Below are positions 12,061 through 64,000 of a stretch of DNA of 64,000 nucleotides, piece by piece. The translations under genes were made by a program, and so were the position numbers. Origin of the DNA: Phallusia mammillata (Eukaryota); the NCBI GenBank assembly GCA_965637545.1, contig OZ281495.1, positions 4,340,001 through 4,404,000 of the forward strand, given 5' to 3'. A model generated the notes under the pieces. The model searched no databases and was not told where the DNA came from. It worked only from the letters and a program-made list of their open reading frames with translations. Positions within the stretch are counted from its first letter, which is position 1; each line of letters starts with the position of its first letter.

Positions 12061-15000
12061 ATGACTTTTAAGTATTTGATTTTACTTTCTTTTTTCGTTT
12101 CACAGAGCGGGGAGTTTACGTATTTTGGTAAGTTGCGTTGTTTAAATTCATTAAATCTCTATTATGTCAATGTTAGAATTGTTTTTAAGGTTGCGGCTGT
12201 GGATACTTTTCCATCTCACCCTACAACACAACCTGGGCATCACATTACAAGGGAGTTTTGTACACATCCGAAATTTGTAATGCTGAGGCGGTGGGATGGT
12301 ATCTGACCTATCCAGAAAATGAATATTGGGGTTCACGAAGCCATGACTATGCTATGTATGACAATTTCACCGGTGACTGGGAACACGATGAGTTGAGCTA
12401 CATCGAATTTAATTCATCGTTGATGCAAAAACAAAATTGCATTGTCACAACATTAGAAGTAACAGTTTTATTAAATCAGTCTTTTGTCGGCATCAGAGTA
12501 TGGCTTGATTGGTTTTGCGTAAAGGATTATTGTTCCGTTGATGTTGCTCTAAAAATTCGAGGTAAATAAATCTTTTGTTTCTACAGCTGTTTAAAACAAC
12601 CAAATCTTGTTGCGTTTAGATTGCAGTTCGACTTTGCACAATGACGTCATAGTAACCGCATCTAGTTTTAATTTTAATCTATCTGGAAACTTCGGTTGTC
12701 AGAATGACGGAAAACTTTTCTATTCAAATGAAACACAATTGAAAAACACTGAAACAGTTTGTTTACAATCAGCTCTGTGGTGGGGTCAGGATGGATTGCA
12801 ATGCTGGAGAGGTTTGACTGAACTGTTTTAAGTGGTCGACATCAAAGTCCTTGCTCGAATATAATTTATTAACAGTATATTAACTTCAAAACGAAACGAA
12901 ATAGCATATATAACTTTTTTTGCTTTGTCATCTTCATGTAAATGGTTTCACGTCACAACATTGGATTATTTTTAGAACCTACAAATGTTACATTACAAGT
13001 CAAGTCAACAATGTGTAAAGCAGTTGGTGACACAATTACGTTGTCATGTTTGTACGATGACACATTGCCACAAGGAAACATGACAAACTTTTATATAGAT
13101 GGGGAAAAAACAACAGTTAAAAAGGTTGTCCATATTACTTACATATTTTGCACTAATAAATGCATTCAGACTGATACCTGTATGTTTGTAAGGGCGAGCC
13201 GTACTTGCTACATCTACAACAGCAACATGATGGAGCAGAGATATTTTGTCAAGCTGAAACACCTTTCACACACGTGTATTCAGAAACTGGAAGATCTGAT
13301 GTCATCACCATCAACGTATTTTGTAAGGTGCTGTCAAATATTTTTCCAAGCTTCCAATATTTAGAGTTTGCAGTTTTTTTGTAGCACAACCTGAAAATGT
13401 TCGAGTAACAATTGATACTTCGGATGACGTAATAAAGTCCGGCACAACAATATTTCTTAATTATTCTCAAAACGTTTCGCTTCATTGCACAAGCAACATA
13501 CACTCCGCTACTTGCCTTTGGAAACTCAATGAAACCATGCTTTCCAAGTCATGTGACACAACTCAATATTTCAACCAATCAGGGTTTGTCACCTGTCAAA
13601 TTTCAAATTGTGCTGGATCGCAGGAAAGTTCAAGAAAGCAAATAACTGTGGTGGATTCAAGTAAGTGTTTCATACATTTTTAGCGTTTTTGTCGCATTTT
13701 GGTGCTAGTAAATTCCCTTCATAGAAAGAAATGAAAGCTTCAAAACCTATATTTTTCAGGAATACCTATCATACAATCTAATTCAAACGACTTTCACCAA
13801 ATATTCCTGGGAGTTGATCTAACTTTGAACTGCAGTGTTTTGTATCAAAATGAGTTGAACACATCATTTTTGTGGGAAATCCCAGCAAAAGACAGAGAAC
13901 TTGACTTTTCAATGCCTATTCTCGAACTAAATAATTTGACAAGATTTGATTCGGGAAATTATTCTTGCATAACTTTTAATGGTTTTGGAGCTGCACAAAA
14001 CACGGTCTTCGTGGATGGTTTATGTAAGTATAAACGCCTTGTTTGCATAGGTTTTATGCGTTTTAACGAACTTGTGATTGGATTTTAGTTGCACCAGTTT
14101 CAGAGTATAGCAAAACCGTGAATTGCAGCCATGATGAAGTAGAAAACGGATTATGTGTGTTTCAATTTTTATCCAACCCTTTCGTAGACGCCTGGGCATT
14201 ATCCGCTAATGGTAAAAATTCCGACTTCAACCAGATGTATTCTTTTTTTACAACTTGTATTGAATTTTGTCACTTTTTGCAGAAACCTTCATTGACTGTT
14301 CTTTATGTTATATTGCTAAACAAGATGAGAGCAATTTGCAGACTTTTTATTTCATTATGGTACGTATTTTTTCTCATTACTTGTTTATAAGTTCTTTACA
14401 AATCAATTAGTTTGGTTCGAGCAAATTTCTGCCTTTACTTGCATGAATACAGTTTGTTTTTCGTATTTTATTTGCAGACGACTGAGCTGGATGAGAAGTA
14501 CGAACTCATTCTTAGATCGAGTTTATTTCCTGGTGAATCACTCATCGCTAATATCCACGTTACTTCAACTAATCCAACTCAACCAGAAACTTTTGACCAA
14601 ACAATCATAATAGTTTCATGTGTTGTTGGGAGCATTGTGTTCGTTGCCATTGTAATTGCGGTCGTATTTTTCTATCGGCGAAACTACATTCCGAAAAATT
14701 CAGGTTAGAACCGATTTGTTTTTTATTGTTAACGGAATGATCAATAATGTTACCATTATTATGAATTACATTCTGAGCTATATTTGCGCTTTAAAAGGGC
14801 GGATGTTTTGCGTGGTATGATTTATAAGATTTCGGAGAATAAATGACCCTGCTCGTGTTACTTTCATTATTTTGTTGACTGGACAAAATCTTTTTTGATT
14901 TTCGACGAAAATACCATTTATGACTAATATAATTCCCTTTCACATACAAGGATGGTGGTTACCAAGTGGCTCTGTTAGTTTTTACCATTACGTTTTTCAC

Positions 15001-16579: not shown

Positions 16580-19500
16580 ATGCAATGTAAATGGAAATAT
16601 TTGATGCTTCAGGAAAGATGTTTAAGGTTACTGTTTTCATTTCTAATATTACTGAAGGAATCTTTTCCGTTTTCAGGTAATTGCAGAATTTGTAAAAATT
16701 TTTCACTAGTAAGTTATTTGCTACTCAGGTTGTGGTTGTGAGAACACAAATTTGACACCACTTTACACCACTTGGGCTTCACAGTACAAAGGGATACTTT
16801 ATAAAGCCGAATTCTGTAATATAGATGAGGTGCAGTGTATACTATCCTGAGAATGAATATTGGGGTTCCAGATCTCATGACCTAACTGTACATTGTCGTT
16901 ACTCAAGTGACATGTGGAAGCACTTGGAATTTGACTACAACGAGTTTAAATCGTCTTTAAAAGCGAATGAAAGTTGTTTTGTTACAACATTGAAAGTAAC
17001 AATCCCTTTAAACAAGTATTTTAACGGCATTAATTTGCAGTTAACCTGCCAAGATGCTTGCATAGTTCAGGATTTCATAATAAATGTCAAAGATAAGTAA
17101 ATGTCTACATTGCTTCGCCACTTCATGAGAGATTGTACTTTTTCTTCAGGTCTAAAAAAGCAAAACCTTTACTTTTGTCCTAATCAAGAAAAACTGTTTT
17201 ATTCAGAGTCAATAAAATTAATTGATACTCAAACGGTTTGTTTGGAATCAGCTCTATGATTGGGTCAGGATGGATTACAATGCTGGAAAGGTTTGCGCAA
17301 GTTTATGTGTTCGTATTAAATCGTTACTTAGCGTGACCAAACGCCGATTGAATTTAACAACGCTAAAATGTTTTTATCTTGATTTTACATTTTTAATTTA
17401 ACAGAATTTTTTTCAAGATGTCGATTTTTTTTTAACTTCGTTAACTTTTATCTACGTTTAGCGCCTATTGTGTCTTTATAACACAACTCGACATCCTGTA
17501 ATGTGGTTGATGATACATTAAGTTTTTCATGTTTATACGATGACACATTGCCACAAGGAAATATGACAAAGTTCGTTGTTGAAGAAAATAATTATGTTTT
17601 TGGAAAAGTTAAGTGTTTTTGACAATAATAATTAATAGTTTTTAATTAAACATATGCATATAATTTATTAAAGGGCCAAACTTTTTTATTTTCCCTACGA
17701 AAACAACACAGCGGTTTACAAATATTTTGTCGAGCTCAAACACTTTTCACACAAATATATGCCGAAAGTAGGACATTGTTTTTATTCCTACGTTGTGTAA
17801 GATTGAATTTTTCTATATTAAATTGTTCAGACAAAACGTATGACGTTGTTTTGAGACCACGTGTGTCAACCGACATCCTTCACTCCGGTTCACGCGCACT
17901 ACTTAATGGAAATCAAGATGTGACGTTGTTTTGTGACACCGATGCCAATCCAAAAGCTAACTGCTCATTTAAATATGCTAATAAGAGTTTAGCATCATGC
18001 GAAATAACTCAAAATGTCAGATCACCATTGTTTGTCACGTGTTTTGCTATAAATGTGTATAGAAATGGGGAATCCCCGTTGCTGGAACTGGTTGTGGTTG
18101 AAGAAAGTGAAAATAAGTAAATTAATTGTAAAAAATAAAAATATAAAGTAACGCACTGCTTTACTAAAACTCCCAGCATAAATGTTGATTTAAATGACAC
18201 TGATCTTATAGTTGCCGGCCATGACGTAACTTTAAACTGCAGCCTTCCGTACCAAGACGAACTAATGGCTTTTTTCAATTGGGAAATCCCATCAGCAAAC
18301 AGGGACGTCGAAACAAGGACCGCGCCTCTGCAACTGAAGAATTTGACCAGATAATGACTGGGGAAATTACTTGTGCTTGACCGACTCTGCATTTGGCAAA
18401 GCATCACACACAAAGTTTTTGGACGTTTATTGTATGTATTTTAGTAACAAACTACAACCGATTCTTGTCAAACTCATACACAATTTGCTAAACTCCATAT
18501 GTCATTAGGCGGCTTGCGACTGAACAGAATGATCTGTTGGAAAAGTTATAATAATTATTACGCTTTAGTCGCCCCTGAAGAGATCGGCTCCCACACTGTT
18601 TGTGATTGGAAGGAAGTGGAAAAGGGAGCTTGTTTGGTTAATTTCAATACAAATCCTGCAACACAATCCTACATGTTGTCGCAAAACGGTGAGTTGATAA
18701 AGTGGATGAATTTTTCCTTCCAACGCTGACACTATATGTGATGTTTTGTAGGTACGAAAGTAGCCTACAATGCAATTCTTGTCAACTTATTTTTCTGACA
18801 ACCACCGAACAAGTGTTTATTCTTAAACTAAACGTAAGTTACTAACCATGGTTTGTATTTTTGTCTAATCGTTTTTTGAGTGTTTAAAGTGATTATCTCA
18901 ATCTGTGTGTCACAAACTGTTTTCTGACTTGATCCTTGGGAAGCTGTTGGTTTGAAAATCACCCCTGATAGCTAAATACATGCCTATTTTTTTCTCGTTG
19001 CGCTAAGTCGCTTACTTTAATTACTCCAGCAGCTTATTTAACTGGCTTTAGGTGTACCAAGCCGGCGCCTGTGAACCAGTGTTTAAAATAATGTTTTACA
19101 CTTATAATACAATTACACATACATACTTATATTACGCATACACTGAACTACAATATTACATTAGTCAACAGGTATTGGTGAAAATTATAGTCTGGCGCTC
19201 TATTCAGCAAGCTTTCCAGACAAACAACTGATTATCGATTTTCAAATTTTATGGAAACCCCACACATCAGGCAGAAACGAAGCTGCAATAATAGTTCTAG
19301 TGTGGTCGGTGGTCTTATGCTTGCTGTTGCTGTTTCTGCAATTGTAGTGATGATTTACAGAAGAAAACAAAACACGACAAAATAAGGCAAGCATGTTTTG
19401 TTTCCTAGCTTTTCAAATTTTCATTTAAATTCATGTATTTTTTTTATGGTGACTGAAAATGTTGATCTGCACGATAACAGAATTTATCTGTTTGGTAATT

Positions 19501-59228: not shown

Positions 59229-59254
59229 ATGTAACACTCTTTAAATTTGTACAG

Positions 59255-61870
59255 GGTGTTCTTCCAGTGTCAATGTTGCAGCAACCACAAGCGGATTTTC
59301 TGCATTTACTGAATCACAAGTGTTTCTGCAACATGATCGAAATGTGACAATCAATTGTTATCCCGATGTTGCAAATCCCAAAGCAACAATACCGATGCGG
59401 TTTCTTGTTCCAACACCATTTATTTCAATGAAACATCCACTGCTAATTGCATTGTGAGTAACAAAGTCGGATATGCAAGCAGCGAAACTTTGGATGTTGT
59501 TGTCATATATAAAAGTATGGTATGCATTTAGTTTTTTCTCATTACCGTCATACTTTTACAACTAATCTACATGTACAGGAAATTCCAGCCTTTAAACACT
59601 CGAACAGCCGCACGTCCATGAACAACCTGGAATTTCATACCTCAAGGTCGCTGACTAATCTACAGGCAAACGTAAACAAGGAACTCGTTTATGTTGACAA
59701 TCGGATGCGCCACAATAAACTATCGCTTAATACGAGTAAAACAACGTATTTACTGTTTTGTCCAACCAAGCGCTCAAACACGCAGAAGTTTTCGACTTTC
59801 GTAGGATCGCAGCAAATACAGCAATCAACAGAAACGAAATACCTTGGAGTTAATATCGACGATCAGTTAAAATGGGAGAAACACATAGCCCATGTGGAAC
59901 GAAAACTGGCAAAAGCCTGCAGTATTATGTTCTGCGTGACTACTTTGGACAACAGTTTCTCCGTATTATTTACTACTCTCTTGCGTACCGCTATCTGCAA
60001 TATGCCGTCGCGGCGTGGGGTAGCGGAGACGCTGCATCAATTAAAACGCTTAACATCAAACATAATAAAATTTTGCGAGCTATTACTCGCAGCCCCTACC
60101 GATGTCGCGCTACTCCACTATATCACGACTTGCGTCTTTTAAAATTCAAAGACATTTACAAACTTGAGGTAGCCAAACTATTACATGCGTTTCGTACTGG
60201 TACACTACCTTCCACATACAACTCCCTGTTCACACCCATTGCGTCAGTGCACCACTACAACACCAGAAGGGCTGAAAACCAGAACTACTTTCATCCACGC
60301 GTAAACACCGCGTTCGGCACAAGATCAATTTGTCATCGTGGTCCAAAAGTATGGGAAGAATTACCACACGATATCAAGTTTCTGTCACGCTCGTCCTCTT
60401 TCAAAAAACAGCTGCGCTTACATTTATTAAAGAAATATGACCCCTCAACAATTAATTCACTTCCGGGTCCTCGCTTATACCATGCAGAATACACATAACA
60501 GAGCTTGTTCTCCTATGTCATAACTACCCTAGTTTTCACTTTTTTTGTGTGTGTTTCAGTTTTATCTTAGTGTGATTTTAATTTTAATTTTTTTTTATTC
60601 TATACTATTATATCATTAAACTGGATAACTTGGTCACATACAAAAGAACAAAATACTGCCGTAGGTTTCGTTTTTTTTTTCAGTTCGGCCATCCGAGTCC
60701 AAGACAGTGCAGCACCTTCCCCAGCGAACAACATCTGAGATGTCGTCATCGATCTTACAAAAGCAGAGGAGGAGATGCTCGACGGCAACATTCCCGTCGT
60801 AGCAACAAACTGTCCTCGGGACACCCGGGTCTGCCTACGGGATCACAGGAAACGTTCCGAGGAACCGAGCTGGTGTTTCCGTTTAGGCGGGTTTCATACG
60901 GCCAGCAGAAACTGCGGGTTCAACTACCGTCTTATGCAGCCGGACGTACCCCGCCAAGCTTGTGCTGTCGGTTGTGATCCTACGGCAGAACATACCTACA
61001 ACGGAATTCAACCACAATTCAAATAACAGGACACATGACTCGATAACCTACGGTTTTTTCGGTGTCCTTGCTGTTTACGTATCCGTTCAACAATGGAACT
61101 GTGATGATGATGAAGTGACTATGCAAATAAATTTGATTTGACTTGTGCTATACCCAACTTACGAATTGTGGATCTCAACAGTCCAACTTTGTTTTTATCT
61201 AGTTTGACAAGATTTGATTTAGGAGATTATGCTAGTCATACACAAAACCAGTTTGGAAACGACACAAATACGTTGTGTTTGAACGTGACATGTAACAACT
61301 GTATTCCCAGAACGGCTGCCTTTTTTGCTTGGGACGGTGTTTATTGCATTGGTGGTTTTTGTCTGAAGAAAGCGCTCTTTTAGGCAACGGGTCAATTTTT
61401 TTCTAAATTCACTTAGTCATGTGAAAAAGAAAAAAAATCCTGAATCAGTTTGCTGTTTCTTCAAAGCATATTGTTTAAGGTATGACATTCGCAGGATACA
61501 AACAAAATACTCAAGCTACTTACGCTAATTCTGTAGAAGCTTTGAGGAATGACGAGGATCATAGCAGCGACCGAACTGACCAAATCACTGTACATTATTA
61601 TCGTAAAAACTATTTCTACTAACAAAACATCTTCTTGAATATTCAGTTGCCTTTGCTTGTTTTATTTCAGAAACAGAAATAAGCAATTGTTTCGCATTGC
61701 ATAAACCGTTTAACAGTCACGAGTATTCGGAATTAGGTTAAATGAACAAGAGCCGGACAGGTAAATTCACAGAAAAATGTTTGCTTTTGGTTATTATTTC
61801 GTGTCAATTGATTATTAGGTGCTTATGAAACAACTATTTTAGAGAAAACCTTACCAACGTACAAAAATTA
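59255..61870 (+). pseudogene. Decayed receptor I: Ig exons and tyrosine-motif tail exons interrupted by a LINE
   Basis: Frameshifted Ig5-like exon at about 59255-59510 (VTINC..ANPKA / TANCIVSNKVGYASS). Ig6-like remnant at about 61140-61291 (SSLTRFDLGDYASHTQNQFG). Candidate tail exons at 61495 (ATYANSV), 61671 (HEYSELG*) and 61820 (AYETT). No TM exon found. Confidence 0.55.
59560..60600 (+). mobile_element. 5'-truncated CR1/L2-type LINE (C-terminal reverse transcriptase region, frameshifted)
   Basis: ORFs 59522-60142 and 59872-60498 encode NKLSLNTSKT...KYLGVNIDDQLKWEKHI and IYYSL..RYLQYAVAAWG...LYHDLRLLKFKDIY, typical of CR1/L2-clade ORF2 ends. A T-rich 3' region follows. Confidence 0.85.
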
Positions 61871-62922
61871 GACAAATCATGACAAATATTTTATGAAATT
61901 GTTTTATGAATGAAATTGTACGTTTTCAACGTGATGGACAATATCTTTGCTTCCGCAAAAAATCTGTGTTGTTTGTTATTTCATATAAAAAACACACAAA
62001 AAACAATGAATTTATGAGATTTGTAATTAGCAGATAATATAGAACACAAAAAGTAATGTAATTGATATAACTGTAGCCAACAACAGTGTCACATACGTTT
62101 GGTATATATTTGTTGCCACTCAAACTGATTTTTCAACAAAGCTTATTTGACCATTTTATCCGTATTATTTATAATCGGTACAAGCACATATACCGATTAT
62201 AACCTTAGTTAATAACGTTCTAAACATACATAACTTCAGCTAAATTAATCTTAGTCATTTGTGTGAAAAACAATTTCATGAAACTCATGATATACAAATA
62301 AAATCAACTGATACTTTAGGTACTGCGTGAAAGCATAACATGGGTAAAATGAACCTATAGTTAGGAAATAAAAAGTGTTAGGACCTTCACAAACTAACCG
62401 AAATAACTTTTAACTTGCCATTACTATTTTTAGTTGGAAAGTGACAGTATAGTAGAATGAGACCTGACATTAAGTTTTCCAGGTGATGCACACAGACAAA
62501 GCAAAAGATGCCGAAACTAAAAAATTTTGCTCAAATTTTCCAATCCACCGGCATTTGCGAACACAAAAATTACAAAATTTGTTTATACACAGCTAACCGG
62601 CGTTTAGTGCTCAGTTAATCACGACGACAGAAAAATTCTAGACAGATTTAGCGCAATCTAATGTACATGCACTTAAGCATATTAATGTGCTTACTTTTAT
62701 TTTACTTTTGTTTTAATTTGGCTAAATCAACTATTCCCAACTAATACATATGCGGGCTGATAGCAAACACTACTTTGCAAATCTATACATATATTTAAAT
62801 ATGTGCGACATGCGATGTCAGAGAGAAATCGTACAGCTGTTATAATTGAAGAACTTAAAACAAAATTTGGGTAACAATTTAAACATTTTATTTCCATTTA
62901 ACAATAAAATTTGGGTCTAATT

Positions 62923-64000
62923 CTAAGTCTCTAACTCTATGTCTGTTTTAACTGGCTCATCAGAACAGGGGCAACAGCAGCAGCAGCAGCAACAACACTT
63001 GAGGTGCTTCATGATAAAATCAATAACAGCTTTGATTCCTGCCAAACACAAATATTACAAAAATATTTTTGTTCTAAAAAATATTTTTATGCGCAAAAAT
63101 GTTTGTAATTGATTTTTATTTTCGAAAATAGTAATGATTTTTGCTTACCACTCCAAATGGCCATCAAACATTTTTTTATAGCCTCCCAAATGCATTTCCA
63201 ATTCCAGAAATGACCGGTAAAACAGCCAACAATAAATAAACCGACTATCAGTATCGCCCAGAGCCAGTCTGGTAAAGCTGTAAACGATAAAAACATTGAC
63301 AACAGCTCTATGCAAAGTTCGTTGAACTGGCACAATGTAAATTCTTACCTGAGCAGTTCTTACATGTTGACACTTTACCAGAAGTGCAATAAGAAGAGAC
63401 AACAACTATACCTTCCTTCTGACATCTCGCCACAGCAAACCCGTTACATCCGACGGGACAAGTCAAATTCACCAACTCATTGTATTGAATTGTAGCTGGA
63501 CTGTTGTCATATTTACAATCCTCTTCACAATCACTTTTACATGGTAAATATTCATTCAAGTAACAAACCACTGCAAAATAGAATCAGGGCATTAAAAAAA
63601 TCGTTTTGTCAATAAACCAAAGAATACGGAAAAACAAAGAGTGTGTACCATTTAATTATAACATGCAGAAGTTCGCTCTAGGCATGAGCTGTCCTTAATT
63701 TATTGTGAATGTTGTTGTTTTTTCCGCTAGTGAAACACATAACTGACATCATTACACAATTAACAAAAAACGAAATATTCGTTTCAAATTATACAATATG
63801 GACACAACAATCGATGCGAAAGTCGCATTTTCTCTCTGCATTATGTATGAAATGCAACCAAGGGCGATTTGTTCACTTGTGTAACGTCACCTGGTTGGCA
63901 AGGGTTCGTGACGTTCAACAACTTGTTGGCTCCACAAACAGCTGTAGAATTTCCACTGCAACCATCAGGACAAGTCATATTGATACTTTCTCCAAACCGT
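62923..64000 (-). CDS. Gene J (partial, runs off window): paralog of D with sushi-like repeats, one TM and a poly-cysteine tail
   Basis: Minus exons: beyond 64000-63891 (INMTCPDGCSGNSTAVC), 63570-63379 or 63349 (VNLTCPVGCNGFAVARC, matching D's VDLTCPTGCNGIVRATC), 63277-63149 (TM WLWAILIVGLFIVGCFTGHFW) and 63038-62923 (GIKAVIDFIMKHLKCCCCCCCCCPCSDEPVKTDIELET*). All exons are phase 1. Confidence 0.8.

What the first reader, a model, noticed from the sequence alone, without database searches (positions are those of the whole stretch)
62923..63038. Nine consecutive cysteines in the cytoplasmic tail of sushi protein J
The last exon encodes KHLKCCCCCCCCCPC, from a TGY codon run with mixed TGT/TGC. 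It follows a TM and an amphipathic segment (WKCIWEAIKKCLMAIWSGIKAVIDFIMK). Juxtamembrane Cys clusters are established palmitoylation sites, so J may be heavily lipidated and raft-targeted instead of signalling through tyrosines. The triplet run could also vary in length between alleles. Paralog D lacks it.
Basis: partly seen in the sequence, partly recalled or inferred. Interest (0 to 1): 0.7.

Follow-up and report, generated by a model that had tools for sequence, protein, structure and literature searches.

The report
Nine-cysteine string in receptor tail
A sea-squirt surface-receptor gene has a predicted last exon that spells nine cysteines in a row just inside the membrane, probably a multi-lipid anchor like that of cysteine-string protein. 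No RNA or related species yet shows that the exon is used.

Summary
On the minus strand, 63038-62926 plus stop 62925-62923 reads (G)IKAVIDFIMKHLK-C9-PC-SDEPVKTDIELET*. The codons are TGT TGT TGCx5 TGT TGC.

The exon follows a transmembrane (TM) exon (63277-63149) across a 110-nt GT..AG intron. That intron is in phase 1, like the other introns in the 3' part of the gene model. The strongest support for the junction is structural: the amphipathic helix that starts after the TM continues in exact register only in the spliced reading. 0.2% of control peptides do as well, and the unspliced reading loses the pattern.

The rest is unproven:
- No RNA holder was found, and three probable RNA contig sets laid nothing.
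- The one DNA contig set is identical to the window, so it shows no length variant.
- No paralogue or orthologue of the TM or tail exon was found. (TGY)n runs are common microsatellites in this genome.
- Four related short-tailed genes have an in-frame stop at the end of their TM exon, so J may also stop early.
- One of those relatives ends TM-CCCC-RGKT*, so cysteine runs recur in this group.

Best reading (about 0.45): a receptor-borne cysteine string that is multiply S-acylated. It is a new variant of a known kind, of moderate interest.

The parts
62971..62997 (-). Run of nine Cys codons (TGT TGT TGC x5 TGT TGC). The longest pure repeat is (TGC)5.
62926..63038 (-). Predicted last coding exon. 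Its first two bases complete a Gly codon with G63149, then it reads IKAVIDFIMKHLK-C9-PC-SDEPVKTDIELET.
   Evidence: The acceptor is TTGGCAG|G. The frame is open for 37 codons. The other two frames give only short open frames (LLLLLLLLP and VVAAAAAVAP readings), read directly.
62923..62925 (-). Stop codon TAG.
62887..62892 (-). AATAAA, starting 31 nt after the stop. A possible polyadenylation signal, but weak evidence in DNA that is 65% A+T.
   Evidence: read directly.
63039..63148 (-). Predicted 110-nt phase-1 intron (GTAAGC...TTGGCAG). If it is not removed, the frame runs on as GKQKSLLFSKIKINYKHFCA and stops.
63149..63277 (-). TM exon: LPD, a 21-residue TM, then the first half of a W/I/K-rich amphipathic helix holding two Cys. 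One more Cys sits inside the TM.
   Evidence: The acceptor is TTTACAG|CT, phase 1.
63349..63570 (-). Membrane-proximal Cys-rich extracellular exon (10 Cys, two N-x-S/T sequons). Phase 1-1.
   Evidence: It is related to the next exon upstream and to exons of paralogues D, P1 and P2.
63891..64000 (-). 3' part of the second Cys-rich extracellular exon. The whole exon is 64073-63891 and runs past the window end. Further upstream, outside the window: a sushi-like exon at 64402-64244, and a putative first exon at 65524-65485 encoding MNYSLTTCFIAFV.

Best explanation
J is a single-pass type I surface protein of an ascidian. It belongs to the short-tailed, sushi-type partner genes that sit head-to-head with long-tailed immunoglobulin (Ig)/NPxY receptors.

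Its predicted domain order is: a short signal peptide, an N-terminal region, one sushi-like exon, two small Cys-rich exons, one TM, a roughly 32-residue amphipathic helix, the string C9-P-C, and a 13-residue acidic end.

The likely mechanism is inferred, not shown. The Trp/Ile face of the helix lies flat on the inner leaflet of the membrane and holds the cysteine string at the bilayer surface. There, DHHC acyl-transferases attach several fatty acids. The tail then becomes a second, multi-lipid membrane anchor, which would affect sorting, clustering or residence in ordered membrane domains. This is the role the cysteine string plays in CSP/DNAJC5. The run probably grew by triplet slippage from a shorter Cys cluster.
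For: - The sequence, frame and splice phases are consistent. The five introns of the 3' half of the model that I could place (ahead of the sushi-like, the two Cys-rich, the TM and the tail exons) are phase 1.
- The helix continues across the junction. The hydrophobic moment of the first 13 residues of the tail exon is 0.63, pointing at 273 degrees, against 275 degrees for the upstream half. The unspliced continuation gives 0.08 at 119 degrees. Only 0.21% of 6,099 control 13-mers from open minus-strand frames match in both strength and direction.
- Positive residues lie on the cytosolic side, and N-glycosylation sequons and paired Cys on the other side.
- A related gene, P1, ends with a TM followed directly by CCCC-RGKT and a stop. 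Cysteine runs after the TM therefore recur in this gene group.
- J lies head-to-head with an Ig/NPxY receptor. This matches the D/E pair and the published fester/FcoR layout (PMC11507803).
- There is a precedent for function. Drosophila CSP has 11 contiguous Cys, and palmitoylation of the CSP string is needed for membrane targeting (PMC4447612). [quoted passage not shown]
Against: - There is no transcript evidence. No RNA run holds the stretch. Three probable RNA contig sets from three studies laid nothing. No protein with this TM or tail was found: two word searches of the protein collection were blank and the Atlas look-up gave no usable hit.
- There is no conservation. The TM and tail exons have no paralogue in the genome. 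The ectodomain exon found no orthologue among 1.84 billion representative proteins.
- (TGY)n runs are ordinary microsatellites here, so one could lie in a 3' UTR by chance.
- In P1, P2, P3 and D the reading frame reaches a stop at the end of the TM exon. For P1 I also confirmed that no splice donor precedes the stop.
- S-acylation itself cannot be tested in silico.
Confidence: 0.45

Rival explanations
1. The Cys run is never translated. J ends within its TM exon: the frame reads through the proposed donor into GKQKSLLFSKIKINYKHFCA and stops. The (TGY)9 tract is then a (CAR)n/(TGY)n microsatellite in the 3' UTR or intergenic DNA, and it only happens to be open in a frame that a plausible AG can join.
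For: - Four relatives have an in-frame stop at the end of the TM exon: P1, P2, P3 and D.
- (TGY)8 occurs at roughly 100 or more loci in the genome.
- There is no RNA, paralogue or orthologue support for the exon.
- The same AATAAA would serve both transcript models.
Against: - Donor GTAAGC and acceptor TTGGCAG|G are good consensus sites in the phase used by the other 3' introns.
- Beyond the run itself, the frame stays open through 13 well-patterned residues before it and 15 after it.
- The amphipathic helix continues in register only in the spliced reading (control frequency 0.2%).
- J's TM exon is not homologous to the paralogues' terminal TM exons, so their structure does not bind J.
Confidence: 0.3
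2. J is a young, decaying or silent gene copy in a birth-and-death receptor cluster. The exon is joined as predicted, but the tract is a neutral slippage product with no selected function.
For: - The tail is a singleton in the genome.
- No expression was seen in the sets laid.
- A retroelement fragment and a truncated receptor fragment lie just 3' of J.
- The N-terminal exon junctions could not be fixed with confidence.
Against: - All seven exon-sized frames that I assign to J are open, from the N-terminal part to the tail, and the putative first exon opens with ATG.
- The introns I could place are in consistent phase.
- The patterned helix is not what neutral sequence gives.
Confidence: 0.15
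3. The string is translated but works through thiol chemistry rather than lipidation. It could bind metal (Zn, Cu or Cd, like metallothionein), sense redox state, or oligomerise through disulfides.
For: Twelve cytosolic Cys lie within 57 residues. This rests on general chemistry only. No tool result points to it specifically.
Against: - The string hangs on a membrane-surface helix next to a TM, which is the setting in which DHHC enzymes act.
- Known contiguous Cys strings (CSP) are acylated (PMC4447612).
- There is no His/Cys spacing typical of metal-binding sites.
Confidence: 0.1

Closest known systems
Cysteine-string protein (CSP/DNAJC5)
   Same: It carries a contiguous cysteine string: 11 in Drosophila, and 12-15 Cys in the domain generally. 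The string is extensively palmitoylated and needed for membrane targeting (PMC4447612).
   Different: CSP is a soluble J-domain co-chaperone with no TM, so the string is its only membrane anchor. J has a TM and an ectodomain, and no J domain. This is an analogy of mechanism, not homology.
Botryllus fester / fester co-receptor gene pairs
   Same: The ectodomain plan matches: a signal exon, then a sushi exon followed by two short extracellular exons. The genes also sit in a cluster beside type I Ig receptors with tyrosine motifs (PMC11507803).
   Different: Fester has three TM exons, and J has one. J's sushi match is below the Pfam threshold. That paper mentions no cysteine or palmitoylation feature (0 occurrences). 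Sequence homology to fester was not tested.
Cys-rich acylated tails of viral and cellular type I proteins (coronavirus spike, influenza HA, CD-MPR)
   Same: These are single-pass proteins whose cytosolic Cys are S-acylated. In CD-MPR the acylated Cys lies 34 residues into the tail (PMC2199859). The spike tail is palmitoylated (PMC12828983).
   Different: As far as I recall, the Cys in those tails are interspersed or few, and none has nine contiguous. J's string sits at the end of a long in-plane helix.
Paralogue P1 of the same genome (G000:C2:4573431-4575880)
   Same: It has sushi-like plus Cys-rich exons related to J's, and a Cys run after the TM.
   Different: P1 has only four Cys, placed directly after the TM, in a terminal exon that ends RGKT*. 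Its TM exon is unrelated to J's. A sister copy, P3, has WFFKK in the place of the Cys run.

Membership tests
Sushi/CCP domain proteins (Pfam PF00084) | A domain scoring at or above the Pfam gathering threshold of 20.7 bits | tested here: not met
   J's exon at 64402-64244 scores 13.3 bits, E 0.12. Paralogues D (22.2 bits) and P2 (23.6 bits) pass. J's Cys-rich exon weakly matches a sushi-repeat protein, P0003 (E 2e-4). J is sushi-like by kinship rather than by its own score.
Fester family (Botryllus) | A sushi exon followed by two short extracellular exons | tested here: met
   The sushi-like exon is followed by two phase 1-1 Cys-rich exons. The architecture is as described in PMC11507803.
Fester family (Botryllus) | Three consecutive exons, each encoding one TM | tested here: not met
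   J has one TM exon. The following segment is amphipathic with charged residues, not a TM.
Fester family (Botryllus) | Sequence homology to published fester proteins | not tested
Cysteine-string protein (DNAJC5) | An N-terminal DnaJ (J) domain | tested here: not met
   No DnaJ hit on any J exon.
Cysteine-string protein (DNAJC5) | A string of contiguous or near-contiguous cysteines | tested here: met
   C9-P-C.
S-acylated membrane proteins | Cytosolic Cys at or near the membrane surface | tested here: met
   By prediction only. The Cys lie after a TM on the positive-inside side, at the end of an amphipathic helix.
S-acylated membrane proteins | A thioester-linked fatty acid on those Cys | not testable with these tools
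   Needs acyl-biotin exchange, acyl-RAC or acyl-PEG assays.

The most novel reading that the evidence does not exclude
J is expressed and carries the first cysteine string described on a transmembrane receptor. An in-plane helix plus up to about a dozen acyl chains would form a second membrane anchor. That anchor would sort a tail-less, sushi-type recognition receptor into ordered membrane domains beside its tyrosine-signalling partner. The number of Cys could be tuned by triplet slippage.
Probability: 0.3. Interest if true: 0.55.

Novelty: new variant of a known kind. Interest (0 to 1): 0.4.

Why it matters
Runs of cysteine are uncommon in proteins, and the best-known long one, in CSP, is a heavily lipidated membrane anchor. 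A comparable string on a single-pass receptor would be a natural test case in two ways. It would show how many acyl chains a tail can carry. It would also show how lipid anchoring substitutes for a signalling tail in the paired short-tail/long-tail receptor genes of ascidians, the group in which the Botryllus tissue-compatibility genes were found. The coding triplet repeat could also let anchor strength vary between individuals. None of this stands until a transcript is shown.

Tried and rejected
- **RNA support.** The look-up of sequencing runs found only two holders, both covering introns and so DNA. Read laying on 6 kb gave no contigs from X3, X6 or X8, and one identical DNA contig from X2. 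Contig sets cannot prove that a gene is silent.
- **Protein searches.** The word search with the tail exon alone was too short. It was blank with the 43-aa open frame that contains the tail exon and with the 85-aa frame around the TM exon. The representative-library search with the 73-aa Cys-rich exon gave four weak, non-orthologous hits. The protein Atlas gave no usable hit.
- **Paralogue search for the TM and tail exons in the genome.** Only two chance hits turned up, one of them a TG-repeat CVCVCV frame.
- **Other CCCC runs in the window.** I rejected them as out of frame or non-coding.
- **A plus-strand poly-Q gene over the run.** I rejected this too. There is only a 61-codon open frame (a 57-aa ORF from its ATG), with no neighbouring plus-strand exons; the nearest plus-strand features are a retroelement fragment and receptor fragments.
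- **Census of the whole cluster.** I did not try to get round that limit.
- **The joined exon model.** All searches were made exon by exon, by reference.
- **The N-terminal junctions.** The exon 2/exon 3 junction could not be fixed. The best donors and acceptors disagree in phase.

Full report
**What is in the sequence**

On the minus strand, 63038-62926 reads IKAVIDFIMKHLK, nine consecutive Cys, P, C, SDEPVKTDIELET, and then TAG at 62925-62923. The first two bases complete a Gly codon. The Cys codons are TGT TGT TGC TGC TGC TGC TGC TGT TGC, at 62997-62971.

This is the only run of five or more Cys in the six-frame translation of the window. The two four-Cys runs elsewhere do not code in that frame. 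The one at 19322-19333 is an out-of-frame reading of a TM segment. The one at 13216-13227 has stops nearby and no TM.

The other two frames of the J run would read LLLLLLLLP and VVAAAAAVAP. Each sits in a short open frame bounded by stops, read directly.

**Gene context**

The window is G000:C2:4340001-4404000 of a 240-Mb assembly. Earlier notes of this scan call it an ascidian genome, and the gene content fits.

I extended the sequence beyond the window end. On the minus strand I found a series of exons with GT..AG borders:
- a putative first exon at 65524-65485, encoding MNYSLTTCFIAFV, with donor T|GTAAGT;
- two N-terminal exons whose shared junction I could not fix, because the phases disagree;
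- a sushi-like exon at 64402-64244;
- two related Cys-rich exons at 64073-63891 and 63570-63349;
- the TM exon at 63277-63149;
- the tail exon.

The five introns of this 3' half that I could place, from the one ahead of the sushi-like exon to the one ahead of the tail exon, are phase 1.

Pfam gives J's sushi-like exon only 13.3 bits, against a cut-off of 20.7. The corresponding exons of paralogue D (22.2 bits) and paralogue P2 (23.6 bits) pass. J's Cys-rich exon weakly matches a sushi-repeat protein.

On the plus strand, from about 66950, lies an Ig-type receptor with NPxY tail exons, related to gene E of the window. J therefore sits head-to-head with a long-tailed receptor, as D does with E. 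This is also the published fester/FcoR arrangement in Botryllus (PMC11507803). Fester itself has three TM exons, and J has one.

**Is the tail exon joined and translated?**

No experimental evidence could be obtained:
- No RNA run holds the stretch. The two holders cover the introns as well, so they are DNA.
- Contig sets of three probable RNA runs from three studies laid nothing on 6 kb around J.
- Two word searches of the protein collection were blank. A full HMMER pass over 1.84 billion representatives, using the 73-aa Cys-rich exon, gave four weak hits and no orthologue.
- The TM and tail exons have no paralogue in the genome.

What remains is internal evidence:
- The donor is G|GTAAGC and the acceptor TTGGCAG|G. 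The intron is 110 nt, in the same phase as the other 3' introns.
- AATAAA starts 31 nt after the stop.
- A structural test is the most telling. The 20 residues after the TM form an amphipathic helix whose hydrophobic moment points at 275 degrees.
  - In the same helical register, the first 13 residues of the tail exon have a moment of 0.63 pointing at 273 degrees.
  - The unspliced continuation (KQKSLLFSKIKIN) has a moment of 0.08 at 119 degrees.
  - Of 6,099 control 13-mers from open minus-strand frames of the window, 1.4% reach a moment of 0.6, and 0.21% also point within 20 degrees.

A helix of about 32 residues therefore runs seamlessly across the proposed junction. It has a W/I/L/V face and a K/E/D face. 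That pattern is hard to explain if the second half is untranslated DNA.

**Reasons for caution**

(TGY)n tracts are ordinary microsatellites in this genome; their complement is (CAR)n. The eight-unit pattern has 837 overlapping matches, against 276 for the reversed control. From the listed places I estimate roughly one locus per 1.5-3 Mb. One such tract falling in a 3' UTR in an open frame is not absurd genome-wide.

In the four related short-tailed genes I could read, the reading frame reaches a stop at the end of the TM exon:
- P1 ends ...AIYCCCCRGKT*; here I also checked that no splice donor precedes the stop.
- P3 ends ...LLYWFFKK*.
- P2 ends ...EKWFEGKIGK*.
- D ends ...KLDV*. A GTAAGT lies across that stop, so I cannot exclude that D splices on.

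If J behaved the same way, it would end 21 codons past the proposed donor, and the run would be untranslated. J's TM exon is not homologous to theirs, so the analogy is not binding.

**A finding in favour**

P1 is related to J through its Cys-rich exons. It carries four consecutive Cys directly after its TM, plus three more Cys inside the TM, and then stops. Its sister copy P3 has WFFKK at the same place. Cysteine runs behind the TM therefore arise repeatedly in this gene group. That fits a selected lipid-anchor role, and it suggests how J's longer run could have grown. The (TGC)5 core is a slippage-prone repeat.

**Mechanism (inferred)**

The topology is type I. N-glycosylation sequons and paired Cys lie on one side, and Lys-rich sequence on the other.

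The string starts at the 33rd residue after the TM, so it is not strictly juxtamembrane. The in-plane helix should nevertheless hold it at the inner leaflet, where DHHC enzymes act.

The precedents are these:
- Drosophila CSP has 11 contiguous Cys.
- CSPs are extensively palmitoylated, and the string is needed for membrane targeting (PMC4447612).
- A Cys 34 residues into the CD-MPR tail is palmitoylated (PMC2199859).

I put about 0.6 on the exon being translated as predicted, and about 0.75 on acylation if it is. Together these give about 0.45.

**Allele length**

The single DNA contig set that I laid is identical to the window over 6 kb, with no alternative contig. It may be the assembly's own source, so this says nothing about the population.

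**Limits**

- Every search was made exon by exon, by reference.

**Verdict**

This is a new variant of a known kind, namely a cysteine-string type lipid anchor placed on a transmembrane receptor tail. It is of moderate interest and depends on transcript evidence.

Noticed in passing
L040:2545-2666 (G000:C2:4575762-4575883, + strand): Paralogue P1 has a sushi-like exon and three Cys-rich exons. Its terminal TM exon has three Cys inside the TM, followed by CCCC-RGKT and a stop. That is an eight-residue cytoplasmic tail, half of it cysteine.
   Followed up: partly
L044 (G000:C2:4461598-4461750, + strand): A TM exon matches P1's at 60% identity over 30 of its 39 residues, but ends LLYWFFKK* where P1 has CCCC. 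The Cys run is therefore a recent replacement within this pair.
   Followed up: partly
window 63149-63277 and 62998-63036 (- strand): The two halves of the amphipathic helix look alike at an 18-residue offset (WKCIWEAIKKCLMA against IKAVIDFIMKHLKC). This could be an old internal duplication, or simply the five-turn periodicity of the helix.
   Followed up: no
window 59513-60495 (+ strand): Long open frames here look, by eye, like the C-terminal part of a reverse transcriptase from a non-LTR retrotransposon. They lie just 3' of J, in the locally G+C-richer stretch.
   Followed up: no
window 59246-59632 (+ strand): Ig-type exon fragments are 78-83% identical at protein level to exons at 68668-69161 of the receptor head-to-head with J. 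This is a truncated duplicate on the other side of J.
   Followed up: no
window 19280-19385 (+ strand): The CCCC seen here in one frame is an artefact of frame. The real frame reads a TM followed by a stop-transfer signal (VVGGLMLAVAVSAIVVMIYRRKQNTTK*). It shows how TGY-rich DNA can mimic Cys runs.
   Followed up: yes
L002:6950-L003:900 (window 66950-70900, + strand): An E-type Ig receptor with NPxY tail exons starts about 1.4 kb from J's putative first exon, on the opposite strand. This is a second head-to-head short-tail/long-tail pair, like D/E.
   Followed up: partly
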